Counted from the stretch's first letter, positions 7,521 to 39,110 are shown. The stretch: 64,000 nucleotides of DNA from Anolis carolinensis (GCF_035594765.1 NC_085846.1:20323190-20387189), one strand, 5' to 3'. The notes: generated by a model from the letters alone, not told the origin. Made by a program: numbers and translations.

Positions 7521-7689
7521 AGCCATGGAAAGCCATGGAAAAGCTCTCTAAGGACTAACACTGCATAGTGACTGGAGTGCAGCCTACATGTCTGAAGAGG
7601 AGGGTTTCGACCCCCCCCCCCCCCACTTCAGCCCTGGGAGAGGCAGGATGGCCTTGGGCAGGGCACACCCTCTCAGCCTCAGGGGGTCC

Positions 7690-12675: not shown

Positions 12676-12727
<52 letters not shown>

Positions 12728-13535: not shown

Positions 13536-13563
13536 AACAAAACAAAATAAATCTGAGTTTAAT

Positions 13564-14210: not shown

Positions 14211-14310
14211 GAGTTTTTTGAGACTGAAAGAGTATCATTTGCCTAATGCCACACAGTGGGTTTTCATGTCCAAAACGGGATTTTAACCTCACTCTCCAGA
14301 GAGACAAGCT

Positions 14311-14524
14311 GCATCTGCAGTGCAGGATTAATGCAATTTGACACCACTTTGATCACCAAGGCTCCATGCTGTGGAATCCTGGGAGTTTTTAGTTTAGTGA
14401 GATACCAGCACTCTTTGGAAGAGAAGGCTAAAGACATTGCAAAAACTGCAACTCCTATAATTCCATAATGCCAAGCCATGCCAGTTAAAGTGGTGTGAAA
14501 CTGCATTAATCCTGATGTGTAGAT
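14311..14524. mobile_element. Palindromic ~210-bp MITE (other copies ~15731-15945, ~45277-45466, ~63693-63860)
   Basis: Long inverted arms catctacac...attaatgcagtttgacaccacttt / aaagtggtgtcaaactgcattaat...gtgtagat. Confidence 0.8.
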
Positions 14525-14822
14525 TTACCCATGGACTCCCAACCAGGAGAGTTCAGAGTAAGTAGCAACAAGATGATGAAACACCCACTGAATATATAAA
14601 ATGCTAAATCAAAGGGTATCCTGCTCTCTGTGAGCATCAAAAGTCTGAAGGCAGGCGCAGGCTCTTAGCTCTCCAAGTACTACTTGTGTTCCTTTATGGT
14701 GAACTTATTTATCCCGAACCCTCAAAGATAGGGCATGTGAAGCAACATGAGGCAGAATAAGCATCTTCTAGTCACTCTGCCTGCACATATGGTCTTGATA
14801 TATTCATCTTGTTTCAGGGCTG

Positions 14823-15168
14823 ATGGCCTTGGAAGAAGGAGATGCCGATACCTTAAAACGCCGTGTAGTGGAACTACTGCTTCAGAACCCCCAAGGCATC
14901 AGGTTTGAGAATTTTTCTGGGGCCTTCCATCAGCTGCATGGTTACTACCCTCGTATTGCTCTTCAGGGATATCATAAGCTCAAGGAATTATTGGCTGATA
15001 TGAAGAATGCTGTGGTTGTGGAAAGGCGTTCACGGCAACAAGTTATGAAGATTGCAGAGGGCTTCTGCCTTGACCTTTCGTTGGAAGGAGAAAAAGGGAA
15101 TGGATTGGAAACATCCGAAAGAGAAGTGGAGAACCTGCGAGATGAAGACCAAGTTGGAGGAAAAACAA
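14823..15168 (+). CDS. LOTUS gene coding exon 1, LOTUS-like domain 1
   Basis: DTLKRRVVELLLQNPQGIRFENFSGAFHQLHGYYPRIALQGYHKLKELLADMKNAVVV; donor ACAA|GTAAAT, phase 1. Confidence 0.8.
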
Positions 15169-18100
15169 GTAAATGCAGCCAAATTTGGATCCTGGCAGCC
15201 CAATTTAGTTGGAATGATATTGTATGTGATTTTCAGATGGCGCATCTACAGCATAGAACTAGTACAGTTTGACACCTCTTTAATTGCCATGACTGGCCGC
15301 AGTGGTGCAGTGGGTTAAACTCTTGTGCCAGTTTGACGGCTGACCTGAAGGTTGGGTTGCTCACCTGAAGGTTGTTGATTCAAATCTGCAAGACGGAGTG
15401 AGCTCCCGTCTGGCAGCTCTAGCTTGTGAGAACATGAGAGAGACCTCCCAGCCAGGGCATCCCTTGGGCAGTGTCTCTGTAGATGGCCAATTCTCTCACA
15501 CCAGTAGCGACTTACAGTATGTTCTCAAGTCACTTCTGACACGATTTAAAAAAATGTGTATGCATAAGGTTTTGGCATGGTATAATTCATAATTGTATGC
15601 AGATGGTTATCTTTGTTTTCAGAATAGGTGTCCTGATTGCCTAAATTACTGTCATCATAGTGTCTCTGGCCTGACAGAAGAAAGGAGAGGGCATGCGCCA
15701 GCATGGTAGTATAAGCAGCCACCATCTGGGTACATCTACACTGTAGAATTAATGCAGTGTAATACCACTTTAATTATTATGGCCCAATGCTATGCCTTCC
15801 TGGTATTTGTAACTTGCTGAGGAACTAGACTTTTTGTCAGCCAATGCTAAACACCTTATAAAACTGAAACTCACAGGATTCCATAACAAAGAGTTGTGAC
15901 AGTTAAAATGGTGTCAAACTGCATTGATTTGAGAGTAAAAATGCATCCCAAAAAGGAACTTTTGGATATTGTGTGTGGATTAATTGATGAGAGAGAGATA
16001 TCAGCAAGGGCTCCAGCAAGGATCCACTACTGTGCCACTCTGCACTTTAATTTGTTACTTCAGATAGGAAGTTTTATCCGCAGGTTCTACTGCATTTTAG
16101 GAAATATTATAATTTTATAATTCTTACAATGTTATGTGCCTTGTTATTTTTATATTGATGTCACTGTGTATATACTTATGTATTGTTGTTTATATGTGGC
16201 ACTTGGAGAACTTCTGTGAGTCACCCCCAGTCCCTTCAGGGAAATGGAGGCGGGCTATAAATAAAAATATATTGATTGTTATTACTATATAGAATGTCTG
16301 CAGACACTCCAGTTGGGATCTAAGTTAGGGAAGAATTCATTCATTATTGGCTAAGCTCCTGGGGGTGCCCATGTCCATATGACAAACAATAATAACAAGT
16401 GGAATATTGAGTTGAGATCCACGTTTGTAGGCATTTTGATTTATGACTTGTTCTTTTTGTAGCTCTTGCAGACATCTTGGATTGGCTCATCAGCCTCCTA
16501 ATGGAGTACAAATCGGGACTGAGAATTAGCTACATCAAGAAATTCATGCTATCCAAGCATGCAGTGAACATGGAAAAGTTCAGCATTGCCCAAGGCTACA
16601 AGAACATCATGGAATTCTTGGAACATGAACTGCCAAAGCTAATAGTCAGATATCGAGAGAAACCCCGTGAATATGTTGTACAGATTCCTGAAGGTACAAA
16701 TAATACTGGATTATGTGGAGGGGAGGAATTAGTGCAGTGTCGCGATTAGAGTTTTGGACGAGGACTCCAGGAGTTCAGGGTTTGAATCCCCATTCAGCCA
16801 TAGAAAAGTCTAGGTCAGTGGTTCTCAACCTGTGGGTCCCCAGTTGTTTTGGCCTTCAGCTCCCAAAAATCCTAACAGCAGGTAAACTGGCTGGGATTTC
16901 TGGGAGTTGTAGGCCAAAACACCTGGGGACCCACCGGTTGAGATCCACTGATCTAGCTGATCTCCCTCTGAGGTTCCAAGGAAGAGAATGGCAGACTTCT
17001 GGATAAGTCTTGCCAAGAAACCCTATGATAGGTTCACCACAATTCAGAATCAACCTGAACGACAACATTTGTGGAGGGGAGGGGTTGGTTACAGTTTTCA
17101 AAGAGCATTTAGATTATAAATTTAAAAAGTTGTTAATAAACAATGCCATATGGATAGTTTCAACTCAGGGATGCTATGAAAACTGGATCATCTTTGTAAT
17201 CTAAGCCTACCAAGCCTTGCCAAAAGTTTTATTGTTGACACACCTTGAGAAAATGGTTTGTTCCTTATGACCAGGACACAAAGTGTTGTTGCAAATCTCC
17301 ACTAAATCGCAGAGAGCTTGAGTCAACATTTTATCAATTGCTACAGAATCAGTCAAATTCATGGATTGGCCACTTTAATATTTCTGTTAACTATCTTCAT
17401 AATGTTTATGAAGAGTGAAAATATTTTATTAAGGAGTCAACAGATACTATGAATCAAATAAGGTTTCATTGTGTTCTGTGGAAGCAGGCAGGTCTGTTTC
17501 ACATTATGTAACTGTTTGTAATTTTTGTCAGATCTCCTTGACTCAGATCTGTCTCTGGACTCAGATTTCTCTACATCGAGCTCACAATCTTCAACCCAGG
17601 ATCTAACAAGAACAAACTCTGGTAAGATTGTCTTGGATTCTGGGTCACATAGTAACTACCATATGTCCTGCAGTTGACCCATTCAGGACATGATATTTCT
17701 GGGAGGGCTTGAGGTTTTAAATCTCACAGTGAGGTCAGAGTTACATTGGATATCTCTTTTGACGTAAGGCATTAGAAGTAAGCAGTTTTAGAACTGATCA
17801 TCAGTGTCCAAACTGAATCAGAACTAAACTTCCAGAATGCCCTGGCTGGGACTGCCACTGATCGTGCTGGCAGAAGGTTCTGGGAATGGTAGTCCAAACA
17901 CTAATCATAAGTGTTTTTCAAGGCTTTTATGGCCGGAATCACTGGGTTGCTGTGAGTTTTTCGGGCTGACAGGCATCCTCGGAGATGTGAGGTCTGTTGG
18001 AAACTAGGAAAATGGGATTTATGTATCTGTAAAGAGCCCAGGTTGAAAGAAAGAACTCTTGTCTGTTTGAGGCATGTGAAAATGTTGCAGTTGATCACCT

Positions 18101-21100
18101 TGATTAGCATTTAATGGCCTTGAAGCTTCAAAGCCTGGCTGTGTCTTGCCTGAGGTAATACTTTGTTGGGAGGTGTTAGTTGGCCCTGATCATTTCATGT
18201 TGGGAATTCTCCTGGAGTGTCCGGAGTTCCCCTGTTTTCAGAATAATTTGAACACAGCATATTATTAGAGAACACAGAATTGCTGGACCACTCTTAACAA
18301 CCATCATGTCAGACTACACAGAGAAACCACTGAAATCCACAAGCATTTAGTCAATTTCAACAGAAAGGAGGAAACCATGAAAATGAACAAAATCTGGCTA
18401 CCAGTATGTTTTAAAAACCTCTAAAATCAGAACAGTAAATAAAGAACAACACTCTGAAAACTGGAATTCCAGACATGAAACAATCAGGGCCAGCTAACAC
18501 CTCCCAACAAAGGATTCCCTCAGGCAAGAAGTAGCCAGGCTTTGAATCTACAAGGCCATTAAATGCTAATCAGGGTGTTTAATTGCAACATTCACACTTG
18601 CCTCAAACAGAGAAGAGTTCTTTCTCCCAACTTGGACTTCCCACAGATATATTAACCCCACTTGCCTAGTTTCCAACAGACTTATACACCTCTGAGGATG
18701 CCTGCCATAGATGTGGGTGAAATGTAAGGAGAGAATGCTTCTGAACATGGCCATACAGTCCAGAAAACTCACAGCAACCCACTAATCATAAGCCTCACTT
18801 CTTGTGCATTCTATGTACCTCTGTGACTGCTTCCCCATTTCCAGTTACGTTCAAATACAACTTGTTCAGTCTGAGTTCTAAAAATAAGGTTAGTTACAAC
18901 TTATATAGGATTCTTTTTTCTTTCTTTCTTACAGCTAGCTCTTTGTATTGCACCTGCAAAATTGACCCAAACCATGTGAAGCAACCTACAAAATATGTCC
19001 CAGGTGAAACTGTGTGATGCTCTGAGTTGTGCTGTTGTGGTTTGTGTATGTGATGGAGCAGGAGTTATTAGTGTTTTTTTTTTCAGATAAAACTTTAACA
19101 TGAGACTATAAGCATGTTTTGAATTTTGCATTATTATTGAAGGTGTATCCATCATTGGTTTCATTATATATAGCCAAGCTTTTTTACCCACCCACTTCCC
19201 TCATAATTTTGAGTGTACTTTTTTCTTGATGGATACTATAGATGTGAGTCTTGAAGTTCAGTGCTTTTTCTTACAGATCTGCCGGCTGCTTCAAAGCTAA
19301 TTCGGGATGTGCTCAAGAGATTCCCTCGTGGTATGAAAGTACGTTTGCTAAAAAGAGTCCTCAGAAAGAGACGCAGATTTCACTTGGAGGCATTCTGCAC
19401 ACAGCACGGATACCAAGATGTGTTGTCCTGCTTGAAGGATATCCCTGAGCTGCTTCTCCTAAATACAAATAGGCCTCAGAATTGTGTCGTCCGCCTTCAG
19501 CCATGTAGGGCAAATACTGTCATATTGTTACTGTGTCCCCCATTCCCTTTCCCAAGCTTTGTTGTGACCATGGTCAAGGCTGTATAGACTTTATCTTCCT
19601 GGTTAGCAGAGAAGCACGAATAACTTCAGTGATATTTTGCCATCAGTAGGTGGGATTTTGGCACTTGATGTGGTAATCCACAATCCCATATGGGTGGTTT
19701 TTCTTACAGTATTTCCTTTCTTTACCCTTAACTCAGAGGTAGCATGCAAACTGTATATACTTATAATCTGTCTACCAAAACTTGTCAGAGGTGTTGTTAT
19801 TGAAATAATTTGTTTCTTATGATTAGGATACATAGTGTTGCTCTGCAAATATCAAGTAGTTTCCTGAGATTGTGAGTGACCATCTTATTGATTGCTACGC
19901 AGCAAATGGAAAGCCACAGTATTATTTTGCGAGGATTGGCCACCTTAATATTGGCACTCCCCCTCTATAGCACTCTCTCTTAAGTACTCTATTGAATATA
20001 TATGTTATGCAGACATTTTCCAGCTTCTAGCTTTTATGTTTTCTGTGTTGTTTTGAAATACATCTTTTTTTCATTGTTTCAGCTGTTTCATAATGTATTG
20101 TCGAAAGCTTTCATAGCTGGAATCATTGTGTTACTGTTCGTTTTTCAGGCTGTATGGCCATGTTCGAGCATCATTCTCTCCTAATGTTTTGCCTGCATCT
20201 GTGGCTGGCATCTTCAGAAGTCTGTTGGAAGTGAGGCAAGTGGAGTGTATATATCTCTATGGAATGTCCAGGGTGCGAGAAATAACCTTTGTCTGTTTAA
20301 AGCAAGTGTGAATGTTGCAGTTAGCAAGCATGATTAGCATTGAGTAGCTGTGAACGTCCAAGTCAGTAAAAGAGGGTATCTGCATAGCGCTAGTCTGAAC
20401 TTTGTTGTCTGAAGGCATCCTCTGCTTGGAAGGTGTTAACTGACACTTGATTGTTTGCTGTCTGGAGTTCCCCTGTTTTAGAGTGGTGTTCTTTATTTAC
20501 TGTCTTGATTCTGATGTTTTTTTTAAAAAATACTTGTAACTATGAAAACGAACAAAATCTGGTTACCAGAATTAAAAATACCAGAATCAAGACAGTAAAT
20601 AAAGAACATCGCTCAGAAACAAAGGAACTCCAGACAGCAAACAATCAAGTGCTAGTTAGCATCTCCTAAACAAAGGATGCCTCCAGGCAGCAACAGTCAG
20701 GCTAGCTCCATGCAAATACCCTCAGTCATTGACTTTGCAGCTGCAAGACTACTCAGTGCTAATCAAGCTTGCTAATTGCGACATTCACACTTTCTTCAAA
20801 CAGACAAGGGTTCTTCCTTCCACCCTGGATATTCCACAGATATATATAAACTCTATTTTTCTCACTTCCAACAGACTTCTGAAGATGCTGGCCACAGATG
20901 CAGGTGACTATAGAGCCCGAAAAACTCACAGCAACCCACTGTTTCATAATGATTATGATGTAAGCCACTGAAGAGATTTCATTAAGGAGTCAATGAAATC
21001 TATGATTCTATGATTCAACAGATTATATAAAGCCAGTTATAAGGCCTCCTGAAAAACATTTCAGTGTGCCCTGTGTAAGCAGTAAGTTGTGTTTCATACA

Positions 21101-24100
21101 AAGTAATTTCATATTTTTATTAGGTCACTTTGGCTCTGATCTGTCTTTGGACTCGGATTTCTCTGGATGCAGCTCTCATTCTGAACCCCATGGTCTAACA
21201 AGAATGAATTCTGGTAAGATTGCCTTTGATGTTCTGAGTCACATAGTAACTATGTCCTTCAGTTGACCCATTCAGTGCATGCTACATCTCGGAGGTTTTG
21301 AGGTATTACATCACATGATGCATGCAAAGTTACACTGGGTTGCTTTTCCCAAGTAGTCAATGAGAATTGTGATTGAACTTTTGAGAGAATATTGGCTCCA
21401 ATCTGCCTTTCTTCTCCTCCTACAAAGTTTCTACCAGAAGACGTATCAAGAGAAGGGTACCAGATGAAGTTTCTGCCAGTGGTTTGCTTTAAACCAGTGG
21501 TTCCCAACCTCTGGGCCTCTAGGTGTTTTGGACCTCAACTCCCAAGAAATCCCAGCCAGTTTACCAGCTGTTAAGAACTGTAGGAGCTGAAGTCCAAAAT
21601 ACCAAAGGTTAGCTACTACTGCTTTAGACTGTGCAAGCTTCAGTAGAATAAATAAAGGCCACTTCATTATCTGTCAAATAACACCGATTACTCTTAAATG
21701 CTATTAGAGGAAATAATGCAGAAAGGCACAATGCACTAGCCCATAATTTGTTGTGTATGTGATGAGAACTACCAGCTCCTATGGTCAAGGCTTTTTCTGC
21801 CACATATGGAGCAGGAGGCTCAAATCAAGATAGGTGACATGGATGCAAATAGATTCCTCTGGTATCGATGGGGTTCTTGTTCAGTGGAGAATGAGCTATC
21901 TCTTTCAGTGGGGTCTAACAATAAAGAAGAATGATGACATGTCCTGCAGTTACAATGGGAGATGAACTATGGCTGATATTTTCTGAGAACTAATATCTTG
22001 TTTGCTACAACATAAAATCTCTCCACTGATGGAGAGTGAACATACCTATCATAGCTTTGGGGATGCCAAGCCACTTTCCTCTATAAGTACATCTTCCAAG
22101 ACTCACCACAGCAATGGTCAGAAGAGCATCAAAATTTTTTATGACTTGCCACCTTTCTTCAGAAGGAAGAAAGAGCTTTGATGGAAAAGGGGAATTTGAG
22201 TTCCCCCTTATGTTTTGGGCTTCTGGAAGAGATTGTCCAAAAGAGTAATCTAATCATAAGCCACATGTCCTATGTAGCTCTGAATAAGAGTGTACATTTC
22301 ACTCATTATGTTCAGATCCTTTCATTCTCCACTAGAAAATTCTCGCTAATTCTCACACATTTATGTCTGCTTCTCCATTTCTAGTTAGATTCAAGTGTAA
22401 TTGAATTATTTTGAAAATAAGACTGGTGGCTGGTTTTTGCAGGAATCCTCTTTTATTTCTTACAGCTGTCTCTCTACCTTCTACCAGTGTGAGTGTGCTG
22501 AACCATGTGAAGGAACCTACAAACCAGGCCCTAGGTATAGCAGTGTGATGTTCTCATTTATGCTGTTACGGTTTGTGAACTGGATGGGAATTGTTAGTTG
22601 TGTTTAATATTTGTTTTAGAAAACTCCCAGTATGAGACTATAGCCATGCTTCAAATTTTGCAGTATTTTTGTCAAACCTGTATTGCCTGAAGTGCATCTA
22701 TCAAATAAGAATCTAAATGTATTGATACATTGTGTCTGTACTCTGATAGTCATTCGACAATAAGTCTTGCGTTCATCTATTTACATAGATGCTTACATCT
22801 CATCCAAACGTACCCTCTTGGGTATTTACAAATATTTAATTGTAGTTTATATTATCATTGATTTTAAGTATTAATTTCAAAAATATAATGTATTTATATT
22901 TAATTATATATATTATAACGGTGTTCCATGCAGTCATGCCGGCCACATAACCTTGGAGGTGTCTACAAACAACCTCTAAACTCTTTGGCTTAGAAATGGA
23001 AATGAGCACCAACCTCTAGAGTTGGACACAACTAGACTTAATGTCAGGGGAAAACCTTTACTTTAACCTAATTATATATTTATAGTATAATTTTATAATT
23101 CAATGCATCCCTTGTGTATTGCAACAGATGTACTACCAGTAAATGTGTCTGTCTGGCAGACGATCTTAACTGGGGCTCATTTTGGGCATAGGGCTTATTT
23201 TTGGGGAAATTGCATCAAATACCAGCTGCCCAAAACTCAATGGTAAATTGCCTCATTTAGCCACTCAGCCAAATGTCATACAAACTCCCAACATTTTAAC
23301 CTCACGTTCCTTGTCCAACAGACCACTTATTGTATAGTCTACTATACATTCCTAAACCTTTAATTGGAGTTATGGAACCTAACATTTTTTTAAATTTTAT
23401 GTAACCTCATAATATACTATAAGCATTTAAATCATTGCAATTACACAATGTTTTTAAAAATGAAATTGCATGAAGTGGTATCTATCATATTAAAGATTTT
23501 AAAATATGAGGTTCTTCACTTTTGTTACCTATGAACTGAACTATTGTGGCCATATCTGGGTTGGTTTGGTGCACAGGATTATCTTTGATTGCGTTTCTGA
23601 AATTTACATCTATGTGTTTTCTCCCCCGCTCTGGTAGCATTACCAGAAGTTTTGTCTTTAGTCAATAACCTGCTCACCAAGTACAAAGACGGTCTGAGAA
23701 TTAAGAAAATTCAAGATTTCCTGATGGCTACAAACAGCATTGACCTTGAGAAATTCAGTATCATGCAAGGCTACAAAGGCTCAGTGGAATTTTTGCAGCG
23801 TCAAATGCCTTATTTATCCTACAAGAAACGAAACCAAGGACTCCACAGTATTGTTAAACTGGGTAATGTTCAGATTGTCAACTGCTGGGTTCAGTTGTGT
23901 TGATAGACAGGCTATAAAAGAGAATGAATTTCAGTTTAGATTTTAAATGTCTACCAGAGATAAAACCAATCAAGACACATCAGCCAGTGTCTTCCAGCTT
24001 TTTTCTTGCTAGAACTGAAGGTGTCATTATAACCTGCTCTGGGTCCCCCTGGGGGAGAAGAGTGGTATATAAATAAAATAAACTAAATAAATAAACAAAC

Positions 24101-27100
24101 CCAAGATCTTTGTTTTAAAAGGCAATTATGTTTTGCTCCATCACCCTGCTACTACTGTAATTCCTGTCTGTCTAAAACACAAGTTCAGAATTGGCATAAG
24201 GGAGAGCCTGGTTTTGTTTTTGTTCTTTGTTGTGAATTGTGGCTTATTTTGGAGCAACATGCCAGAAAGCCCAGTTGACAACAAGCTGAAGAAAAGAAAT
24301 CTGGTTGTCCATGAAAAGAATGGTTGGACTATATGGTTAAATATGAATCTCTTCCAATTCTAATTCACCCTGGCTCATTTCTATTCACAAATACTGTTTA
24401 TTTCATTTACATAGGGTTTTATATATTTGATATACAGTTGGCTTTCCACATCCATGGGTTTTACATGGATATATGGATCCTAGACACAACCCTATTGGAT
24501 ATTATCAAGGGTCTGCAGTGTTTTTAACTGGTTTGCAATGGGCAAAATTCTATTTGGATGACGTTACATGTGAGTGAACCAAACTTGAAATGATTACTCA
24601 AGTTTCAGAATCAATAATGACTTTTCTTTTGGTCTAACTCAGGTATAAAGGCAAAAAAGAAGCAGTCTCAAAAACATCCTCAAACTGGAACAACCAAAAA
24701 GAGTAAGTTAGAAATGACTGGTACAATAGAGTTTGTTCTATCATGATTTTTGAATCCCTTCTAATGTTGGTGGAATTTCCATCTAAGTCTTAGGACAGCA
24801 TTCTGTTTGGTAACTACTCTCATCCATTTCTTTATTCTTCCTGCAACATCTGTCTTCAGTTTCTTTCCTCACAGTCTCACTTCATAGATTTTTCTGGGTC
24901 AGTCCAATTTTTCTCTACAGCATGCATGGACAATATAGGCTCTGCCCCTCCATGCTGTTAGATTACATTTTCCATAATCCTCCATCATTGACCGAGCTAA
25001 AACCACTTAGAGTTGGAGACCACCCGCATTTGGAAGACAATGTGTTCCCCACTCTCGTTCTATGCTTATCCTTGACTGTATTGACTGATTCTCTCTCCAT
25101 GTTTACCCTGTCAACCTTCCTCAGTTTCCATCAGGTTTGTTTAGCATCCTTATAAATGCACAGATATTTCCACTGTTGACTGTTTTGTATAATTAGATCT
25201 GCCAAATGTTGGTCCCAGCTAATTGGACTTTTTCTGTTTCTTGTTAGATCCTTCTGTTGCTTCTGTTCCCCCTTTGGTGAATGCCCCTGAGCCACAGTCA
25301 GCAAAACCACTGGAGCCAGTTCATTCAGAATCAGGTAAATACCCTTCTTGTTGTTAGACAACAAAGTAAAGTGATAGATAAGACAAATGACACCTTTTGC
25401 GTTGGTTTGTAAAGATTCACTAGTTAACATAGCTGGTAAATCAGCCAGGGGCTATTCTTGCTAGCAAGGGGGCATTGTGGTTACTATTAATTCTTATGAA
25501 AATCTTCAAAAAAGATCATGCAGATGCAAAGTTGTCATGTTCTAAGTCAGGACAGGAGAACCCTTGGCTGTTCAGACCTATCAGCTCCAACTGGGAGTTG
25601 CTCTTCACAGTTTCTGATCAGATTCATTCTTAGACCTGTCTACAGATCCCTCATTATTATTGTTACACTGATCAAAACTGATGTAGATGAGGGTGGTCTG
25701 ATACCATAACCAGGGAAGCCACATCCTCAAGATGTTATTCAGATAGTTTTATTGTACAAGCCAAGGCACAAAATGCACAGAATACTACCCTCAGAGCTAA
25801 CAGGAAACAAAAGACACCAAACAAAGGCTATCAAAGGCCAAACAGTTCCAGCCCAGCTTACCTGTATGAACTTATCTCCCCCTATGAACCTCCTCGGAGA
25901 TTATGATCGCCTGGGGAGGCCCTGCTATTGGTCCTGCCTGTTTCACAAGAGTGACTGGCAGGCATAATAGACAGGGCCTTCTCAGTGGTGGTCCCTCAGC
26001 TGTGGAACTCCCTCTCTAACAAGATTAGATCAGCCCCCTCCCTCCTAGCCTTCAAAAGGAAAGTAAAAACCTGGCTCTGGGATCAGGCTTTTGGAAAATA
26101 GTGCAGTGCAGTAATATATTTGGAATATGTGTAATGACTACGGAATGGCCTTAGATTATCATTTCTGGGTGGCATGATTTTAGCCCACGAGAACCTTAAG
26201 ATGGGGAAAGTGTCTGAAATAAGCTCTGCCTATATGATTTCACCAATTTTTCCTTGTGTTCTTAATTTATCTAATATATTGTGTTCTGTGTTGTGAATTT
26301 GCATTTGCTAGATATCTAGACTGTAATAGAGAATCATCTATTTATGTGGCAAAAACAATCTCGTAGATTGGATTGCTTCATTTTTTTTCACTGTCTCTTA
26401 ACTTGGGGAATTTGGTCAGAAGATGGACTGCTATCACATTTTCCAATACGTAAATGTCTCAAGCAGCTGACTTTGCAGTAATGGTGTGCACTTTCCCTAG
26501 GCTTTGGAAGTGTCTCTAAGTCTTCCGTTACACCCAATGATTTTTCTGCAAGCAAATCTCAGTCCCAGAGCCTGCCTTTACAAGCTCCTTCCATACCACA
26601 GGAAGTCAAGAACATGATCCATTCCAGCATGCGTATCCCACTTCCATCCTTTCATGAGGTCCATAGTACTTCACCAGCCAAGCCTAACAATTCCAGCCAG
26701 TCTATTTCCAACAGTCCACCCCAGAAGCCAAATGTATGCCAGTTTGGTGGATCACCACCCATGGAAGAAGTCCTTTGTCAGTTGGATAGGCAACTGTCTA
26801 GCAAATCCAAAATGACTGAAGACGAACCTTCAAAGGACCAGGATGATTTGAAGCAGCAAGTAGCCCACATCCTGGCCTTGCATCCAGAAGGCATGTCACT
26901 TTTCCAGTTTCGTGCAGCCTATAGTGCCACCTATCAGCAGCACTTCCCAATGGACAACGCTGCTTCTGTCAAACAACGTTTGCAGGAAATGCCAGATGTT
27001 GTTTGTATGAAAAGCTATGGAGTCCAAACAAGGCTGCTATCTGTATCTTGTGCAATGCCATCTTTAAAATCTGGTAGGTAAGGTGGTATATAGTCTTTTG

Positions 27101-29814
27101 TTCTGTGTATATCTCGGATTGTTTTTCTACTTTTCAAAAGAACCAACATATTCCTCATGAACAGGGAAAAGTAAAACCAGTAGAGAACCTAAAGCAAGGA
27201 AAACTTCTATTCTCCTCACCTAATTTTTATCTTACTAGTTACATCTATATTTCAGTAAGAAAACCAATAGCCATGTGATCCACATTTTTTAAAGGACATA
27301 GTTAGATAATATACTCAATGTTACAGAAGTAGTGTCAATGTGACATAACCCGAGTGTGAGAGGTACTACTCAGTGAGGTGATCCATTGGAGACTTAGTCT
27401 GTGAACGCTTATTCTACCAACTTCTCTCAATTGGTTTCCAAGGTGCTACAAGATCCCTTTCTATATTGATAACTAACACTGCTATGTCTTTGAATTCTGT
27501 ACAGCTTCTTTCAGTGTTGTACTTCTTCTAGTATCAAAAACATTTCCAGTTCTCTGTTGTCTGAGCCTAATTTTCTGACTTTGCAGGTCAGCCTGTCTCT
27601 GCCACAATGGAAAAAACTTCAGTTGTCCCTGGTCTCTCACAGCCCAGAACAGTGTCACTGACTCAAGAGGTAACTCTTCTCAAGCTTTCTCCCCCTCCCT
27701 TAGGCTCCTGTGGCATCCCCTATCCCATTTAACTCCCAGCTTCAGACCATTCCCAAGAAGCCAAAAAACAAGAATGATGGTGTTCTCCTCAAAGTACAGC
27801 CACCAAGAACACACACACACACACACAACACCCTGCAAATCTTTTGCAGGAGCACAAGAGAACTAGAGTTAAATGGGTGGATCTTTCGGGTCAACTTGAT
27901 TAATCTAAAATTAAGGAAGTGACTCATTTCTGGCAGTGCTCTGCTTAAAGCTGACCCTATGATAGCTTCCAAATCTTGCCTTAAGCCTATGCTTCCCAAG
28001 GCGTCTGTGCTTCGCATACTTCAGTTCTCGTTCTCTCTCTCTCTCTCTCTTTTCTCTAGAGTTTTGAAGAACTTGGAGGAGATGACAGCAAGGAGGATTA
28101 CCCAGTCCTTGATTCTTTGCTCCACCAAGTAGTTAAACCAAGAGCTCATGTGCAAGAGAATGTGAAGAAGAAGCCCAAGTCAATGGGAGCTCTTGTCATT
28201 CCTCAGCCCCCTGTAGTTTGTCATACATATGCTCAAGTCACAGCTTCGCATAAACCTTTGAAACCAAATAGTCTTCATATGAAGCCCACACATCTGAATA
28301 GCCCTTATATTTCTGCCAGTAGTGCCTCAGTGCCTTCATATCCAAATGATCCTTGTATTTCTGCCAGTAGTGCCTCAGTGTCTTCGCATCCAAATGATCC
28401 TTTTATTTCTGCCAGTAGTGCCTCGGTGCCTTCACATCCAAATGATCCTTGTATTTCTGCCAACAGTGCCTCGGTGCCTTCACATCCAAATGATCCTTGT
28501 ATTTCTGCCAACAGTGCCTCAGTGCCTTCACATCCAAATGATTCTCGTATTTCTGCCAACAGTGCCAACAGTGCCTCAGTGCCTTCACATCCAAATGATC
28601 CTTATATTTCTGCCAGTAGTACCTCAGTGCCTTCATATCCAAATGATCCTTGGATTTCTGCCAACAGTGCTTCGGTGCCTTCCACCTCTCATCCTGCCTC
28701 TTACAATTCTGGAACATGGGCGCAGCCGGTGAGCTATCCATTTGTGCCGTTGGTTTCCCAGATGCCAGAGATTTTCCCTGTCATGCCTGCCTATATCAAA
28801 GTTTCTAGATATCCTTCTGGGATCCAGTTTAAGAACCCTACAGTTCAGAGCTCTCCTTTTGCTCAGCCACCCCATGTGCTCCCAATTAGATATGATCCAA
28901 CAATGCATCTGACCCAAAGCATAGAACAATGGAGCAACATTCGTACTCTCCCACAAGTGGATGCCTATTCTCCAGTGAAGACATCATCCAACATTCTGCA
29001 GCTTGCCCAAAGCCCTACATCCTCAACAAGGAGATATCCCATATCTCCATCTTCTAGAAACATCTCCCAGACTGTCCAGCATTTAGAATCTTCTAAACAT
29101 ACCCAGCAGGTTGGTCTGCAGCATGGTTCAGTTGTGGTAACAATGAATAAAAGCTTTGTAGTAACATCTCTGGACACACAGCCTAAGCCTCCAGCATCTG
29201 CTTATCAGAGACAATATGTTGATTGGAATCCTCTGGCATCTACTACAAACACAGCACAGTTCATTTCACTTGGTGCTTGCTCCACTAGTCAGCCCTTTCA
29301 GCCCTTGGAAATTTCCTCTAATAGCAAAAAGAATCCTAATGCTCTGCTTTTTGAACCTCCAGTTTTCGTGGATCAGCCACAACCTGTTAGTGCAAGTGCC
29401 ACCATAACCACCTCATCGTATTCACCACCTTCACTTGTAGATGCTAATGTAAGCCCATATTCCAACCACTTAACTCCCTCCAGTAATTGCAATGATTCTG
29501 CTAGTCAACCTTTAAAGCCTTGGGCTTCCATTCAACAACAACATACTAGCCTGGATGTCTCTGTAATCAATTCCAGCAGAAAACAAGCAGGTTCATTGCC
29601 TTGCCCTCAAGACCTCACTATCAGACCATCCCGCCAACTCTCCATAACACCTTTAAGTGTTTGTACAGATAATGAGCCTCCTATCCAAGCTAAGCCTGTG
29701 GTTTCTTTTTCTAAACATGCTGACGATCATCATGTTTCTTTGCCAATAAACCAGACATCTTATTCTCCCCCAAATAGCCCTCTAAAAAAACTGGATAGTT
29801 GTGTTATCTTGTAA
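14823..29814 (+). CDS. Uncharacterised multi-LOTUS (OST-HTH) domain protein with C-terminal CaaX, about 1301 aa. Predicted coding exons: 14823-15168, 16463-16693, 17532-17621, 18935-19003, 19277-19504, 21124-21213, 22466-22534, 23638-23862, 24643-24702, 25248-25334, 26501-27073, 27587-27669, 28060-29814
   Basis: All introns are GT-AG with pyrimidine-rich acceptors. Phases agree (1 throughout, 0 for the last intron) and the total is 3906 nt with no in-frame stop. Five segments fit the LOTUS pattern (helix, ll..p.G+.+..+, then usually G[YF]..+.e+l..+p). An acceptor at 14817 just before the ATG implies an upstream non-coding exon. Confidence 0.8.
16463..16693 (+). CDS. LOTUS gene coding exon 2, LOTUS-like domain 2
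   Basis: LADILDWLISLLMEYKSGLRISYIKKFMLSKHAVNMEKFSIAQGYKNIMEFLEHELPKL; acceptor tttttgtag, donor GAAG|GTACAA. Confidence 0.75.
16816..16950. mobile_element. Small hAT-type MITE inside a MIR-like SINE; similar element at 21495-21621
   Basis: TIR CAGTGGTTC; near-perfect 8-bp TSD (ctttaaac/ctttagac at the 21495 copy). Confidence 0.75.
17912..18780. mobile_element. Inverted Penelope insertion in a LOTUS gene intron
   Basis: 12-bp TSD ACTAATCATAAG (17900-17911, 18781-18792); minus arm then plus arm. Confidence 0.88.
19277..19504 (+). CDS. LOTUS gene coding exon 5, LOTUS-like domain 3 (strongly basic)
   Basis: LPAASKLIRDVLKRFPRGMKVRLLKRVLRKRRRFHLEAFCTQHGYQDVLSCLKDIPEL; acceptor ttcttacag, donor CCAT|GTAGGG. 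Confidence 0.78.
20096..20938. mobile_element. Inverted Penelope insertion (different subfamily) in a LOTUS gene intron
   Basis: 13-bp TSD CTGTTTCATAATG (20083-20095, 20939-20951). Confidence 0.85.
23638..23862 (+). CDS. LOTUS gene coding exon 8, LOTUS-like domain 4 (paralogous to exon 2)
   Basis: LPEVLSLVNNLLTKYKDGLRIKKIQDFLMATNSIDLEKFSIMQGYKGSVEFLQRQMPYL; shares YK.GLRI and EKFSI.QGYK...EFL with exon 2. Confidence 0.75.
25845..26170 (+). mobile_element. L2-like LINE 3' fragment (others at ~46860-47385 + and ~31850-32135 -)
   Basis: RAFSVV.P.LWNS.P-type terminal coding motif. Confidence 0.65.
26501..27073 (+). CDS. LOTUS gene coding exon 11, Ser/Pro linker plus LOTUS-like domain 5
   Basis: DDLKQQVAHILALHPEGMSLFQFRAAYSATYQQHFPMDNAASVKQRLQEMPDVVCM; acceptor ctttccctag, donor TCTG|GTAGGT. 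Confidence 0.78.
28060..29814 (+). CDS. LOTUS gene terminal exon, Ser/Pro-rich low-complexity tail ending in CaaX (CVIL)
   Basis: Long open frame after a (CT)n acceptor; phase 0 matches the upstream donor GAG|GTAACT at 27669; ends KKLDSCVIL*. Confidence 0.8.
   Translation, partial: SFEELGGDDSKEDYPVLDSLLHQVVKPRAHVQENVKKKPKSMGALVIPQPPVVCHTYAQVTASHKPLKPNSLHMKPTHLNSPYISASSASVPSYPNDPCISASSASVSSHPNDPFISASSASVPSHPNDPCISANSASVPSHPNDPCISANSASVPSHPNDSRISANSANSASVPSHPNDPYISASSTSVPSYPNDPWISANSASVPSTSHPASYNSGTWAQPVSYPFVPLVSQMPEIFPVMPAYIKVSRYPSGIQFKNPTVQSSPFAQPPHVLPIRYDPTMHLTQSIEQWSNIRTLPQVDAYSPVKTSSNILQLAQSPTSSTRRYPISPSSRNISQTVQHLESSKHTQQVGLQHGSVVVTMNKSFVVTSLDTQPKPPASAYQRQYVDWNPLASTTNTAQFISLGACSTSQPFQPLEISSNSKKNPNALLFEPPVFVDQPQPVSASATITTSSYSPPSLVDANVSPYSNHLTPSSNCNDSASQPLKPWASIQQQHTSLDVSVINSSRKQAGSLPCPQDLTIRPSRQLSITPLSVCTDNEPPIQAKPVVSFSKHADDHHVSLPINQTSYSPPNSPLKKLDSCVIL
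28303..28683 (+). repeat. Coding minisatellite, 48-nt (16-aa) unit, about 7.75 copies: P[YCFW]ISA[SN]SASVPS[HY]PND
   Basis: Unit ccttatatttctgccagtagtgcctcagtgccttcatatccaaatgat; one unit has an extra 9 nt (SAN); frame preserved. Confidence 0.95.
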
Positions 29815-30005
29815 TAACAAACATTGAGGAGGTAGGCATTTTCTGGGATGATGCTGGTAGCAGTGATGGATGAGTGCATTCAGAATTCTAAGATGGTTCC
29901 ATCCCATCCAACGGCACTGTTGGCTTCTGTAACTTCTAATTGTTATATCACATTTATTATTCTAATTTTTTTTACTAACTACAGATACATTTGTATGTGG
30001 TGCAA

Positions 30006-30011
30006 AATAAA
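30006..30011 (+). terminator. Candidate polyadenylation signal of the LOTUS gene
   Basis: AATAAA about 190 nt after the stop, followed by a T-rich downstream tract. Confidence 0.6.
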
Positions 30012-31804
30012 TTATAACAAATGACTGGTCTTTTATCGCTTTGCTTTCAATTTTTCTTTCTGTTACATCTTTCTCCATTTTATGAAAATTATTTGGTGGT
30101 CAAGCACATTCTTGTTTCATATTTCCTTCACCTGATTTCCATCCATTGGTGGAAACTGAAGTAGCCCAAGACTTCAGGGCAGTCGGGATAGTGGGACTGG
30201 GTCTGATTTGGGCCAAGACATTATCCAGATGGACATTGCTGCCACCACCTTTTCTTTGCACTTCTCATGCCCATGTCCCTGCCATCCTTGTTGGTCATGT
30301 GAATGTTCCATTCTAACATCAACAGTGGTGCCTTTGATGTCCAGGAGCTTTCATGAAATTCTATGACAGCTAGGAGCAGTGCTGGAAGTAACATAGAGGA
30401 GGTGACAGCCCAGCAATTCTCTGGTTGATCCCCTAAGGGCAGATTAGGCAAATCTATCCAATATTGATGTGCCTTTAGAGGACAAATTAGTTAGGAATCA
30501 AGAAAAAAAATCCATTCTGCCTTGAAAAACAATAGGGAGATGGCAGGAATCATCTGGATCTACCCAAGTGCAGTGATGGCCAGTACTATCTGAAGCATGT
30601 TCAACTTCAGTATTAACAGTATGGCAGGACCAGGCACAAGTTGAAAATAATGAATCTTTAAGGATGTGTGCAATCTGCCCTTTTAATTCGGGGTGTTATT
30701 CTTATTTGCTTCATGGTTTTAGATAGTCATAATGTCAGGGAATCACCTTTTAAGTTTGTGCCTTGAGAGTGAAGATGATGGCCAGGGTTCCTCCAGCTGT
30801 TTCCGAAGCCAGATTACTATCAGAATCTTTGTCTGTGTATCTAGATAGATGATCCTTTTTGTAAACAAAATAAGCTCAGGATGTTTGTTCATTTAATTAT
30901 ACCGTGTTTTAAGTATGCCTCTGAATTTTGCATATACTTAGTTCCTGTTCATTCTTACAGATAATACACTACGATGTGTAGTTTGTTTCCACCCATTTTA
31001 GCCTAAATTAATATGCTCAAAATGTGAACTGAGAAATTACTTGTCTTTCAGTTTTGTTTGGATTCACATTAAAGGTGTGCAACAGAATATGGAAACAGAT
31101 TTAGGAATTTCCTTATAAATAAAAACAAGACATTGCAAAAAGAAGTAAACTGTATGCAAGAATTCATTATTTCCTTGCTATGTCCTTGTCAACTAATGTA
31201 GTCTTTCTAAAGCAAATTTTGTTCTGAAATTGTGCACTGATTTGATTATATTGTATTATTAAATATGTCAGTTGCAATGGCTCTGACTTTGTGACTTCCA
31301 TATTTGGTATCCAGCTCTGTCATTATACATATATGTAGTGTTCTTTTTCCTGTTGAATTATGCCAGCAATGTCTGAATTTTAGCTACTAGCCTTCCCCCA
31401 ATTGAATGCAATGTGCATTTTGCAATATAAACATTCTCCATTCAATATTCTCAATCTCTACATTGTAATTGTGACACTACAGTATTTTACTAAATACTTA
31501 GCTGACACCTATGCTGTGCTAAGTAGCTACCGCTAGTCTAGACCATGTCACAGAAAAATTGTTGACTGTCCTTTAAACATCCAAGGAAAATTAATCGAGG
31601 CAATAAAACAAAATGTTCACATGTCAATATTTTAATACTTTATTCTCATTTTCTACAACTTATACAAATTCATGCTCTGTCAAAACAAAAAGCTTTCCCA
31701 CATTTAGGTCTAGAAGCAAAAGTGAAATATGTAGACTTTTGTCCTCTTAGTCCCAGTCGGAGGAAATGAATAAGTGAATGGTGAGTCAATCAACAGATAG
31801 ACAG

Positions 31805-31852
<48 letters not shown>

Positions 31853-39064: not shown

Positions 39065-39110
<46 letters not shown>

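What the first reader, a model, noticed from the sequence alone, without database searches (positions are those of the whole stretch)
14823..29814. Five-LOTUS, Tudor-less, CaaX-terminated protein: candidate undescribed RNP/germ-granule scaffold
Seen: scattered short ORFs splice into one ~1301-aa frame with five LOTUS-like repeats, Ser-rich linkers and a ~600-aa low-complexity tail. Known: vertebrate LOTUS proteins are TDRD5 and TDRD7 (with Tudor domains) and MARF1 (with NYN and RRM). LOTUS domains bind the Vasa/DDX4 helicase or RNA in germ granules, and LOTUS+IDR-only scaffolds are known in C. elegans (MIP-1/2, also called EGGD-1/2). I find no Tudor, NYN or RRM here. Inference: this is a separate, possibly reptile-restricted LOTUS family acting as a multivalent condensate scaffold, plausibly in the germline or piRNA pathway.
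Basis: partly seen in the sequence, partly recalled or inferred. Interest (0 to 1): 0.92.

Follow-up and report, generated by a model that had tools for sequence, protein, structure and literature searches.

The report
Lipid-anchored five-LOTUS protein gene
This is a real, expressed green-anole gene, listed in RefSeq only as "uncharacterized", that belongs to an old and undescribed jawed-vertebrate family of proteins: a string of LOTUS domains, a long floppy tail and a conserved lipid-anchor signal, suggesting an RNA or RNP scaffold tied to membranes.

Summary
Thirteen GT..AG exons at 14823-29814 (+) give a 1301-aa protein identical to Anolis carolinensis LOC103279778, which RefSeq calls "uncharacterized". 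RNA contigs from four studies confirm the five junctions they could show.

All five domains are LOTUS:
- L1 passes Pfam's cut-off.
- AlphaFold models of L1 and L3 match solved TDRD5, TDRD7, Tejas and Oskar LOTUS structures (Z up to 11.6).
- L5 is supported by profile searches.
- L2 and L4 are supported as relatives of L3.

No Tudor, NYN or RRM domain is present.

The family is not reptile-restricted. Named relatives come from squamates, crocodilians, turtles, salamanders, lungfish, coelacanth, sharks, rays and one basal teleost. They share one plan: type-A LOTUS, then 0-9 type-B LOTUS, then type-A LOTUS, then a disordered tail ending in CaaL. Of 29 tailed representatives, 26 end in CxxL, which is one of only two conserved islands in the tail.

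My best reading is a geranylgeranyl-anchored, multivalent LOTUS scaffold that holds RNA or RNPs on endomembranes. A germline role and DDX4 binding are untested, and the tissue of expression is unknown.

I found no paper on the family. The scan earlier noted a different, single-LOTUS gene 5.3 Mb away in the same genome.

The parts
14823..15168 (+). Coding exon 1 (start ATG at 14823). It encodes LOTUS 1 (type A, aa 1-85, about 14823-15077) plus an acidic linker. An AG acceptor at 14816-17 suggests a 5'UTR exon upstream.
   Evidence: Pfam OST-HTH 24.2 bits against a cut-off of 23.8 on the exon alone, and 39 bits on the full protein. AF2 core pLDDT about 85. Foldseek best hit is the TDRD7 LOTUS 3rco, E 9e-4, TMt 0.77. 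The family L1 profile hits the TDRD5 LOTUS 3s93 at 6e-9.
16463..16693 (+). Exon 2, phase 1-1: LOTUS 2 (type B).
   Evidence: Weak Pfam DUF7515 and OST-HTH on the exon alone. DUF7515 scores 33.6 bits, above its 27-bit cut-off, on the full protein at aa 122-181. jackhmmer groups it with L3 and L4.
17532..17621 (+). Exon 3, phase 1-1: acidic, Ser-rich linker (DSDLSLDSDFS...). It is duplicated as exon 6.
   Evidence: tblastn. DNA alignment with 21072-21272, including the intron flanks, has 87% mean column identity.
18935..19003 (+). Exon 4, phase 1-1: short linker.
   Evidence: tblastn; AG/GT borders.
19277..19504 (+). Exon 5, phase 1-1: LOTUS 3 (type B, very basic, net charge +11).
   Evidence: No Pfam hit on its own. 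AF2 with 108 homologous repeats gives pLDDT 88.8. The top 11 VIA-align hits are all LOTUS structures: Tejas Z 11.6, TDRD7 11.5, TDRD5 10.2, MARF1 8.7, Oskar 8.7. Foldseek TM 0.70-0.86.
21124..21213 (+). Exon 6, phase 1-1: second copy of the acidic, Ser-rich linker.
   Evidence: Its 3' end appears as the loose end joined to 22465 in RNA contigs of all 4 runs.
22466..22534 (+). Exon 7, phase 1-1: short linker.
   Evidence: GT..AG joint to 23638 in all 4 runs.
23638..23862 (+). Exon 8, phase 1-1: LOTUS 4 (type B).
   Evidence: Both of its joints are seen in RNA contigs.
24643..24702 (+). Exon 9, phase 1-1: Lys-rich linker.
   Evidence: Joints 23862>24643 and 24702>25248.
25248..25334 (+). Exon 10, phase 1-1: Pro/Ser linker.
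   Evidence: Joints 24702>25248 and 25334>26501.
26501..27073 (+). Exon 11, phase 1-1: Ser/Pro linker plus LOTUS 5 (type A, aa 605-690, about 26818-27073). This is the best conserved domain of the family.
   Evidence: Full-library phmmer: 47 representatives, 33 at E<=1e-10. The L5 profile hits TDRD7 LOTUS 2/3 (2ly1) at 1.5e-9, and also TDRD5, Tejas, Oskar and MARF1 LOTUS. hhalign against the L1 profile gives 98.8%. 24 of 60 L5 orthologues hit Pfam OST-HTH.
27587..27669 (+). Exon 12: short linker.
   Evidence: Joint 27073>27587 in 3 runs. The joint to 28060 is not listed. Intron-retaining contigs 27046-27615 and 27640-28087 exist at about a third of the exon depth.
28060..29814 (+). Exon 13: 584-aa Ser/Pro-rich low-complexity tail, the CaaX box and the stop codon.
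   Evidence: 100% identical to P0074 aa 718-1301. No Pfam domain. Composition.
28303..28682 (+). In-frame 48-nt tandem repeat, 7.7 copies (a 16-aa unit, roughly ISASSASVPSHPNDPx). It is almost absent from the paralogue.
   Evidence: TRF. The paralogue P0001 aligns across it with a gap from 28338 to 28630. A 'goes back 96' joint in 2 runs hints at copy-number variation or assembly ambiguity.
28714..28743 (+). Conserved island in the tail (TWAQPVSYPF here; core PV[VI]YPP in squamates, turtles and crocodilians).
   Evidence: Conservation scan of the 24-sequence family alignment A6.
29800..29811 (+). The CaaX box Cys-Val-Ile-Leu, followed by the stop at 29812-29814. X = Leu is the signature of a geranylgeranyl-transferase-I substrate.
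   Evidence: 26 of 29 representatives with a tail of 150 aa or more end in CxxL, from squamates to lungfish, coelacanth and sharks. It is one of only two conserved islands in the tail.

Best explanation
The region is the annotated but uncharacterised Anolis carolinensis gene LOC103279778. It is one of two tandem copies about 30 kb apart; the other is LOC103279780.

It belongs to an old jawed-vertebrate family with a fixed plan:
- an N-terminal type-A LOTUS domain;
- a variable run of type-B LOTUS domains (three here, up to nine elsewhere), built from phase 1-1 exons that duplicate easily;
- a second, highly conserved type-A LOTUS domain;
- a 300-700-aa disordered Ser/Pro tail;
- a C-terminal CaaL box.

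Most likely mechanism (inferred). The cysteine is geranylgeranylated and processed at the ER, which fixes the C-terminus in the cytoplasmic face of endomembranes. The long tail acts as a tether. The five LOTUS winged helices give multivalent binding of RNA (by analogy with the G-rich/G-quadruplex RNA binding reported for LOTUS domains) and/or RNP partners. The protein would therefore concentrate RNPs at a membrane surface.

Shown here: gene structure, splicing of the 3' half, the LOTUS folds, absence of other domains, family spread and CaaL conservation.

Inferred only: lipidation, membrane location, ligand, and any germline role.
For: Identity. 13 exon hits to P0074 at 95-100%. The genomic place is CM069372.1 20338012-20353003, with the paralogue at 20284819-20307403.

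Expression and splicing. GT..AG joints appear in RNA contigs of 4 studies.

LOTUS folds. Pfam OST-HTH passes its cut-off on L1. AF2 models of L3 (pLDDT 88.8) and L1 match solved LOTUS domains first. L5 and type-B profiles hit TDRD7 and TDRD5 LOTUS chains in the PDB. hhalign gives 98.8% for L5 against L1 and 94.9% for type B against L1.

Shared architecture. The A-B(n)-A-tail plan is seen across more than 40 representatives.

CaaL. 26 of 29 tailed representatives end in CxxL, in an otherwise fast-evolving tail.

Selection. Both anole copies keep full open frames. Overall dN/dS is 0.54 with dS 0.098, and some domain exons are much lower (L4 exon 0.16).

Ligand by analogy. LOTUS domains from bacteria to animals bind G-rich/G4 RNA (PMC7498356, abstract).

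CaaX rule. That X = Leu directs geranylgeranylation, and that singly lipidated CaaX proteins without a second signal stay on endomembranes, is established knowledge cited from memory.
Against: - No tissue information: run names were coded, so a germline or any other site of action is unknown.
- Nothing here shows lipidation, membrane binding or RNA binding.
- Two salamander models and one gecko model lack the CaaL, although these models may be incomplete.
- An overall dN/dS of 0.54 indicates weak constraint. The L2 exon has dN>dS, though on few sites.
- Only L1 and L3 were modelled. L5 rests on sequence profiles, and L2 and L4 rest on homology with L3.
Confidence: 0.5

Rival explanations
1. 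One reading: a soluble germ-granule or nuage scaffold that recruits and activates DDX4 (Vasa) through its N-terminal LOTUS domain, as TDRD5, TDRD7, Oskar and C. elegans MIP-1/2 do. On this view the CaaX box is incidental.
For: The closest solved relatives of L1 are the N-terminal LOTUS domains of TDRD5 and TDRD7. A multi-LOTUS plus disordered-region plan resembles MIP-1/EGGD-1 (PMC8616582, title and abstract). All well-studied animal LOTUS proteins act in the germline.
Against: Vasa binding needs a specific C-terminal extension, alpha5 (PMC5458760). The L1 profile aligns to TDRD5 only over the core (positions 3-77 against chain 6-81 of 102). The 30 residues after the hairpin are predicted disordered and acidic, unlike the TDRD5/7 extension. 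The apo Oskar extension is also disordered, so this is not decisive. The CaaL is far too conserved to be incidental. No expression site is known.
Confidence: 0.17
2. A somatic or broadly expressed, membrane-anchored RNA-binding factor in defence against viruses or transposons. It would be analogous to the prenylated RNA-binding proteins ZAP-L and OAS1 p46, and under an evolutionary arms race.
For: Evolution is fast: dN/dS 0.54, and Anolis sagrei is only about 65-68% identical. There are tandem duplicates in anole and alligator. The repeat number varies widely between species, and one copy has a recent in-frame repeat expansion. The parallels to ZAP-L and OAS1 are from memory.
Against: There is no sequence relation to any known immune factor. 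Reproductive genes show the same fast-evolving pattern. Nothing is known about induction or tissue.
Confidence: 0.12
3. The conserved C-terminus is not a lipidation site but another terminal motif, for example a class II PDZ ligand (hydrophobic-x-hydrophobic at the end). The protein would then be a soluble adaptor.
For: V-I-L at the C-terminus also fits a hydrophobic PDZ-ligand pattern (from general knowledge). Lipidation was not tested.
Against: The invariant residue is the Cys at -3, and the last residue is Leu in all 26 CxxL cases. The middle positions vary (V, I, L, A, R, S), which is the CaaX pattern rather than a PDZ pattern.
Confidence: 0.07
4. A decaying or functionless duplicate, transcribed but without a role, in which the open frame persists by chance.
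For: dN/dS between the two copies is 0.54, with single exons near or above 1. Intron-retaining contigs are present.
Against: The 1301-codon frame across 13 exons is intact in both copies. The architecture and CaaL are kept from sharks to squamates. Spliced RNA is seen in four studies at contig depths of 30-90.
Confidence: 0.04

Closest known systems
TDRD5 and TDRD7 (vertebrate LOTUS-Tudor proteins; Tejas and Tapas in Drosophila)
   Same: They have an N-terminal LOTUS domain followed by further LOTUS domains. The closest solved structures and sequence-profile hits for L1, L3 and L5 are TDRD5 (3s93), TDRD7 (3rco, 2lh9, 2ly1) and Tejas (8wxs).
   Different: There is no Tudor domain. There is no recognisable TDRD5/7-type eLOTUS extension. 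It has five LOTUS domains rather than one to three, a 584-aa disordered tail and a CaaL box. TDRD5 and TDRD7 did not appear among the named hits of the L5 search. One GenBank name, 'Tudor domain-containing protein 5' for the Varanus member, is an automatic misnomer: no Tudor was found.
MARF1 (NYN + RRM + 6-8 minimal LOTUS domains)
   Same: It has a tandem array of LOTUS domains followed by a disordered C-terminal region. The MARF1 LOTUS 5yad matches the models at Z 8.7.
   Different: There is no NYN nuclease or RRM. The only MARF1-like hit to the family profile is weak: P0094 at E 9e-11, carrying NYN, RRM_MARF1 and MARF1_LOTUS. MARF1 has no CaaX box (from memory).
C. elegans MIP-1/EGGD-1 and MIP-2/EGGD-2 (LOTUS plus disordered regions, no Tudor)
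   Same: These are LOTUS-only scaffolds with long disordered regions. They anchor germ granules to a surface, the nuclear periphery (PMC8616582 abstract).
   Different: They have two LOTUS domains rather than five. No lipid-anchor signal is known for them. Homology beyond the shared domain was not tested here. They occur in nematodes only.
Prenylated CaaX proteins ending in Leu (GGTase-I substrates such as Rap2B and FBXL2, both ending in CVIL; from memory)
   Same: It has the same four-residue C-terminal signal, and the signal is conserved across the family.
   Different: It is unrelated in the rest of the sequence. No LOTUS protein with a CaaX box is described in the papers searched.
RefSeq LOC103279778 / LOC103279780 and their 'uncharacterized protein' orthologues (UniProt 'HTH OST-type domain-containing protein')
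   Same: LOC103279778 is this gene, with 100% identity over the last exon. The orthologues share the architecture.
   Different: None. These entries carry no functional description, and no paper cites the locus names I searched.

Membership tests
LOTUS / OST-HTH domain (Pfam PF12872) | Sequence match to the family model at or above its gathering score | tested here: met
   L1 scores 24.2 bits against 23.8 on the exon alone, and 39 bits on the whole protein. L2 and L5 are sub-threshold alone (14 bits). L3 and L4 have no OST-HTH hit alone, and type B instead matches the related DUF7515 (59 of 108 repeats).
LOTUS / OST-HTH domain (Pfam PF12872) | Winged helix-turn-helix fold superposable on solved LOTUS domains, ranked above generic winged helices | tested here: met
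   For the L3 model the top 11 VIA-align rows are all LOTUS (Z 11.6 down to 7.9), and the next unrelated folds score Z <= 7.7. The L1 model's top Foldseek hits are TDRD7, TDRD5 and Oskar LOTUS. L2, L4 and L5 were not modelled; they are supported by profiles.
Extended LOTUS (eLOTUS, Vasa-binding subclass) | C-terminal extension after the beta-hairpin that forms helix alpha5 on Vasa | tested here: inconclusive
   L1 residues 88-116 have pLDDT below 50 with no helix. The alignment to TDRD5 stops at the core. L5 is followed by a Pro-rich stretch. However, the apo Oskar extension is also disordered (PMC5458760), and squamates conserve a short GFxLxxW stretch after L1.
TDRD5 / TDRD7 | One or more Tudor domains C-terminal to the LOTUS domains | tested here: not met
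   Pfam at E<=0.1 on P0074, and on 12 relatives (E<=0.01 to 0.1), shows only OST-HTH, DUF7515 and a few sub-threshold stray matches, never Tudor. The last exon ends in a stop, followed by a V2R gene on the other strand.
MARF1 | NYN nuclease domain and RRM(s) N-terminal to the LOTUS array | tested here: not met
   None is found in P0074, whereas a true MARF1-like protein (P0094) shows them in the same scan. The protein starts directly with L1.
CaaX prenylation substrates (GGTase-I class) | Cys at -3 from the C-terminus, two mostly aliphatic residues, and Leu last | tested here: met
   CVIL at 29800-29811. 26 of 29 tailed family representatives end in CxxL.
CaaX prenylation substrates (GGTase-I class) | Actual attachment of a geranylgeranyl group and membrane association | not testable with these tools
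   This needs metabolic labelling, mass spectrometry or localisation of wild-type against Cys-mutant protein.
Germ-granule / nuage scaffold (functional class) | Germline-enriched expression and localisation to granules with DDX4 or PIWI proteins | not testable with these tools
   The runs that hold the spliced RNA are coded, without tissue. DDX4 of this species was not available for a complex prediction.
RefSeq gene LOC103279778 (A. carolinensis) | Identical product and genomic place | tested here: met
   tblastn shows 13 exons, with the last exon 100% over 584 aa. The gene range of 14,992 bp in CM069372.1 equals 14823-29814.

The most novel reading that the evidence does not exclude
This is a fourth vertebrate LOTUS family, and the first LOTUS protein with a lipid anchor. 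On this reading it is a geranylgeranylated organiser that tethers germ-plasm or nuage-type RNP condensates (DDX4 and/or G-quadruplex RNAs) to ER, nuclear-envelope or mitochondrial membranes in the germ cells of sharks, lobe-finned fishes, salamanders and reptiles. It would be a vertebrate counterpart of membrane-associated long Oskar or perinuclear MIP-1/EGGD-1, apparently reduced or lost in mammals and birds.
Probability: 0.2. Interest if true: 0.85.

Novelty: new variant of a known kind. Interest (0 to 1): 0.62.

Why it matters
Vertebrate LOTUS biology is built on three genes: TDRD5, TDRD7 and MARF1. This locus shows a further family that is more than 400 My old. It combines a LOTUS array with a conserved prenylation signal and no catalytic or Tudor module, and I found no paper describing it.

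If the anchor is real, it gives a simple, testable way in which RNA granules could be fixed to membranes. It could also help explain how non-mammalian vertebrates organise germline or other RNPs differently from mouse and human.

The variable, exon-shuffled repeat number and the fast-evolving tail also make it a natural case for studying how valency tunes a scaffold. Species with CRISPR methods (Anolis sagrei, axolotl, Pleurodeles) carry members, so function is directly testable.

Tried and rejected
- The last exon alone in the search for homologous proteins found nothing. This reflects the tool's length filter and the low complexity of the exon, and is not evidence of absence.
- Exon 1 alone against PDB sequences gave only chance hits. 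A family profile was needed.
- The full-family profile search returned only squamates plus one weak MARF1-like hit.
- Literature searches found nothing relevant: 12 locus names, 'LOTUS domain' + CAAX, and 'LOTUS domain' + geranylgeranyl.
- Rfam on 12000-32000 gave no RNA family.
- The joint 27669>28060 was not reported by read laying, because repeats at 28019-28065 were skipped. That junction rests on AG/GT borders, reading frame and the RefSeq model only.
- A loose end at 22463 codes for an extra exon of the VEPKKPRSTNS type. That exon is not in the window but is present in the paralogue's protein. I take it to be a paralogue transcript, not an isoform of this gene.
- P0034 could not be placed on a contig.
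- From memory, the assemblies holding P0047 (GCA_027358695.2) and P0041 (GCA_027887145.1) are a spadefoot toad and a sparrow. I could not verify this, so I make no claim about frogs or birds from them.
- Joined step left out. I did not type, join or search a spliced protein of my own. Exons were searched by window reference, and the identical public protein P0074 was used by id. One script summed exon lengths only.

Full report
**What is there**

The + strand between 14823 and 29814 carries short open segments in all three frames. The nearest full-length database protein, P0074, is RefSeq "uncharacterized protein LOC103279778 [Anolis carolinensis]", 1301 aa. It maps onto the window as 13 collinear tblastn hits at 95-100% identity, and the 584-aa last exon is 100% identical.

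With splice sites read from the sequence, the coding exons are:

| Exon | Coordinates |
|---|---|
| 1 | 14823-15168 |
| 2 | 16463-16693 |
| 3 | 17532-17621 |
| 4 | 18935-19003 |
| 5 | 19277-19504 |
| 6 | 21124-21213 |
| 7 | 22466-22534 |
| 8 | 23638-23862 |
| 9 | 24643-24702 |
| 10 | 25248-25334 |
| 11 | 26501-27073 |
| 12 | 27587-27669 |
| 13 | 28060-29814 |

- All exons are flanked by AG and GT, and they sum to 3903 nt, or 1301 codons.
- Exons 2 to 11 are all phase 1-1 and multiples of three.
- The gene's range in the public assembly (CM069372.1 20338012-20353003, 14,992 bp) equals the finding's coordinates.
- I did not build or search a joined protein of my own. Exons were searched by reference, and the identical public protein was used by id.

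**Is it expressed and spliced?**

Eighteen runs from five studies of one organism hold 26482-29814. I laid contigs of four runs, one per study, on 22400-28399. This is the 6-kb stretch with the most junctions.

- GT..AG joints appear at 22534>23638 and 25334>26501 (4 runs each), and at 23862>24643, 24702>25248 and 27073>27587 (3 runs each).
- A loose end at 22465 carries the last 30 nt of exon 6 (21183-21212) in all four runs.
- Exon contig depths are about 30-90. The last two introns are also present as unspliced contigs at about a third of that depth. This explains why the runs held 97% of the words of the stretch.
- The joint 27669>28060 was not listed, because a low-complexity stretch at 28019-28065 was skipped.
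- Tissues are unknown because run names are coded.

**The domains**

Pfam on single exons:
- OST-HTH/LOTUS is above its cut-off only for exon 1 (24.2 against 23.8 bits).
- Hits for L2 and L5 are weak, L4 has only a weak DUF7515 hit, and L3 has none.
- On the whole protein OST-HTH scores 39 bits and DUF7515 33.6 bits (cut-off 27), and nothing else is found at E<=0.1.

A jackhmmer analysis within the family shows two repeat types. Type A is L1 and L5, which find each other. Type B is L2, L3 and L4, which find each other and are what DUF7515 recognises (59 of 108 repeats; 11 also hit OST-HTH). A and B cross-hit weakly.

Profile searches:

| Comparison | Result |
|---|---|
| L1 profile against PDB | TDRD5 LOTUS 3s93, 6e-9; TDRD7 LOTUS 2lh9, 5e-4 |
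| L5 profile against PDB | TDRD7 LOTUS 2/3 2ly1, 1.5e-9; also TDRD5, Tejas, Oskar, MARF1 |
| Type-B profile against PDB | TDRD7 2ly1, 1.6e-3 |
| hhalign, L5 against L1 | 98.8% |
| hhalign, type B against L1 | 94.9% |

Structure predictions:
- I modelled the least certain domain, L3, with 108 homologous repeats. Mean pLDDT is 88.8, with a helix-strand-helix-helix-helix-hairpin order.
- Its best structural matches are all LOTUS domains: Tejas Z 11.6 (rmsd 2.1, 74 aligned), TDRD7 11.5, TDRD5 10.2, MARF1 8.7 and Oskar 8.7.
- Generic winged helices start at Z 7.7. Foldseek TM scores are 0.70-0.86.
- The L1 model (core pLDDT about 85) matches TDRD7, TDRD5, Oskar and MARF1 LOTUS first.
- All five are therefore LOTUS domains. 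Two are shown by fold and sequence (L1, L3), one by profiles (L5) and two by close homology to L3 (L2, L4).

**eLOTUS or mLOTUS?**

Vasa binding needs a C-terminal extension that becomes helix alpha5 (PMC5458760).
- In L1 the 30 residues after the hairpin are predicted disordered (pLDDT below 50).
- They are acidic, and the alignment to TDRD5 covers only the core.
- L5 runs into a Pro-rich stretch.
- This argues against a TDRD5/7-type eLOTUS but is not decisive. The Oskar extension is also disordered when free, and squamates keep a short GFxLxxW stretch after L1.
- LOTUS domains in general bind G-rich/G4 RNA (PMC7498356). L3 and L4 are strongly basic, with net charges of +11 and +6.

**The tail and the CaaX box**

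- Exon 13 encodes 584 residues with 18.5% Ser and 13.2% Pro, and no Pfam domain.
- It includes a 48-nt in-frame tandem repeat of 7.7 copies that the paralogue almost lacks.
- In a 24-sequence family alignment only two islands of the tail are conserved. One is a PV[VI]YPP-type motif at 28714-28743. The other is the very end...D-x-C-V/I/L-I/L-L.
- Of 29 representatives with at least 150 residues after the last LOTUS, 26 end in CxxL. These include lungfish (CVLL), coelacanth (CIIL) and sharks (CALL, CSLL).
- The exceptions are two salamander models and one gecko fragment.
- Six further squamate proteins also end this way.
- By the established CaaX rule (from memory), X = Leu means geranylgeranylation by GGTase-I.
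- There is no second Cys and only two Lys nearby. If the protein is lipidated, it would be expected on endomembranes rather than the plasma membrane (inference).

**The family**

A full-library phmmer with the L5 exon found 47 representatives at E<=1e-3, of which 33 are at E<=1e-10. I read source names for 30.

- Squamates: Anolis, Phrynosoma, Varanus, Hemicordylus, Pogona, Paroedura, Eublepharis, Pantherophis and Tiliqua. One search adds Podarcis, Lacerta, Zootoca, Sceloporus, Vipera, Candoia and others.
- Crocodilians: both Alligator species.
- Turtles: Caretta, Carettochelys, Pelodiscus, Emydura, Mauremys, Macrochelys and Chelonia.
- Salamanders: Lissotriton, Ambystoma and Pleurodeles.
- Others: lungfish, coelacanth, sharks and rays (Heterodontus, Pristiophorus, Cetorhinus, Mobula, Narcine) and the basal teleost Scleropages.

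None is named as anything but uncharacterised, apart from compositional misnomers (mucin-like, NAC-alpha-like, SRCAP-like, RpfA-like). The exceptions are 'Tudor domain-containing protein 5' for Varanus, in which Pfam finds no Tudor, and 'germ cell-specific 1-like protein 2' for an old alligator model. That model is a fusion with the neighbouring GSG1-like gene.

No bird, mammal or frog is among the 30 named. Seventeen representatives were not looked up, so absence is not proven.

The plan is constant, but the number of type-B repeats runs from 0 to 9. The lungfish has multiplied type A instead. The phase 1-1 exon structure, and the 87% DNA similarity between exons 3 and 6 including their intron flanks, show how such arrays grow.

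**The paralogue**

- LOC103279780 (P0001, 1241 aa) lies about 30 kb upstream on the same chromosome.
- It is collinear with this gene at 87-93% DNA identity, introns included.
- Exon-by-exon Nei-Gojobori counts give dS 0.098, dN 0.053 and dN/dS 0.54 overall.
- The ratio is 0.16 for the L4 exon, about 0.5 for the L1 exon, the L5 exon and the tail, and near or above 1 for some short exons and L2, on few sites.
- This means weak but real constraint and fast evolution. Alligator also has a second LOTUS gene just downstream.

**What it most likely does**

The shown facts are a multivalent array of LOTUS winged helices, a long flexible tail, and a deeply conserved geranylgeranylation signal as the only strongly kept feature of that tail.

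The simplest mechanism is a lipid-anchored tether that concentrates RNA or RNPs on the cytoplasmic face of endomembranes. I put this at about 0.5.

That the cargo is germ-granule material, possibly with DDX4, is plausible from the family's nearest relatives. It is untested, and the missing eLOTUS extension weakens it.

Rivals are:
- a soluble Vasa-recruiting scaffold (0.17);
- a fast-evolving membrane-bound antiviral or anti-transposon RNA binder like ZAP-L or OAS1 p46 (0.12);
- a non-lipid terminal motif (0.07);
- a functionless duplicate (0.04).

**Novelty**

The gene is already annotated but has no name, no function and, in the library searched, no paper. A LOTUS-only protein with a CaaX anchor is a new variant of the known LOTUS-scaffold kind.

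It reached the same general point, that non-mammalian tetrapods have LOTUS genes beyond TDRD5, TDRD7 and MARF1. Note s1-590229 flagged the CVIL end of this gene.

Noticed in passing
window 32319-40889 (-): A vomeronasal type-2 / class C GPCR gene on the opposite strand just downstream. The exons carry 7tm_3 (2e-77) and ANF_receptor (2e-19, 7e-10). The public annotation calls a 337-aa NCD3G+7tm_3 product here.
   Followed up: partly
window 42379-43320, 47923-48870, 55412-56467 (all -): Three intact single-exon olfactory receptor genes (Pfam 7tm_4, E 2e-50, 3e-48 and 2e-56). The LOTUS gene therefore sits at the edge of a chemoreceptor cluster.
   Followed up: partly
window 28303-28682; joint 28398>28303: Two RNA runs (X2, X4) show a contig that 'goes back 96' nt, which is two 48-nt units, inside the exon-13 tandem repeat. 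This is either copy-number variation between animals or an assembly ambiguity.
   Followed up: no
window 27074-27586 and 27670-28059: The last two introns are present as unspliced contigs (27046-27615, 27640-28087) at about a third of the exon depth in three studies. This suggests intron retention or abundant pre-mRNA.
   Followed up: no
window 24652: One contig of run X1 (depth 9 of 29) has an extra A after 24652, inside coding exon 9, in an A-rich stretch. It would shift the frame. It could be an error, an allele or a paralogue read.
   Followed up: no
window 22463 (loose end), L001: Contigs in 3 runs join exon 7 to an upstream exon coding ...VEPKKPRSTNS. That exon is absent from the window but present in the paralogue's protein P0001. 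The paralogue LOC103279780 is therefore expressed in the same samples.
   Followed up: partly
window 13565-14216, 17967-18781, 20088-20907 and others: An interspersed repeat of about 600 bp occurs in both orientations in the introns and upstream. It has many copies in the paralogue's locus at 70-85% identity. Depth spikes at 22800-23199 (3521 in X13) point to another expressed repeat.
   Followed up: no
window 7568-8392 (+): A 274-aa Pro/Arg/Gly-rich ORF in a GC-richer stretch (GC 0.45-0.46) has no Pfam hit. It could be a CpG-island-like or repeat-derived sequence upstream of the gene. A neighbouring ORF at 6811-7128 also has no hit.
   Followed up: partly
L002 28368-31666 (Alligator mississippiensis): A second LOTUS-containing gene lies directly downstream of the alligator family member. 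An older alligator model fuses a GSG1-like/claudin-fold N-terminus to LOTUS repeats, so GSG1L2 is probably the neighbour there. This is a handle for synteny with human 17p13.
   Followed up: partly
L005 10001-10876: P0041 is a 291-aa single-exon protein with one L5-type LOTUS, on a 4.5-Mb chromosome next to an NDUFA3-like gene and an EF-hand gene. It may belong to the separate small single-LOTUS family noted earlier in this scan. The species is not verified.
   Followed up: no
   Followed up: no
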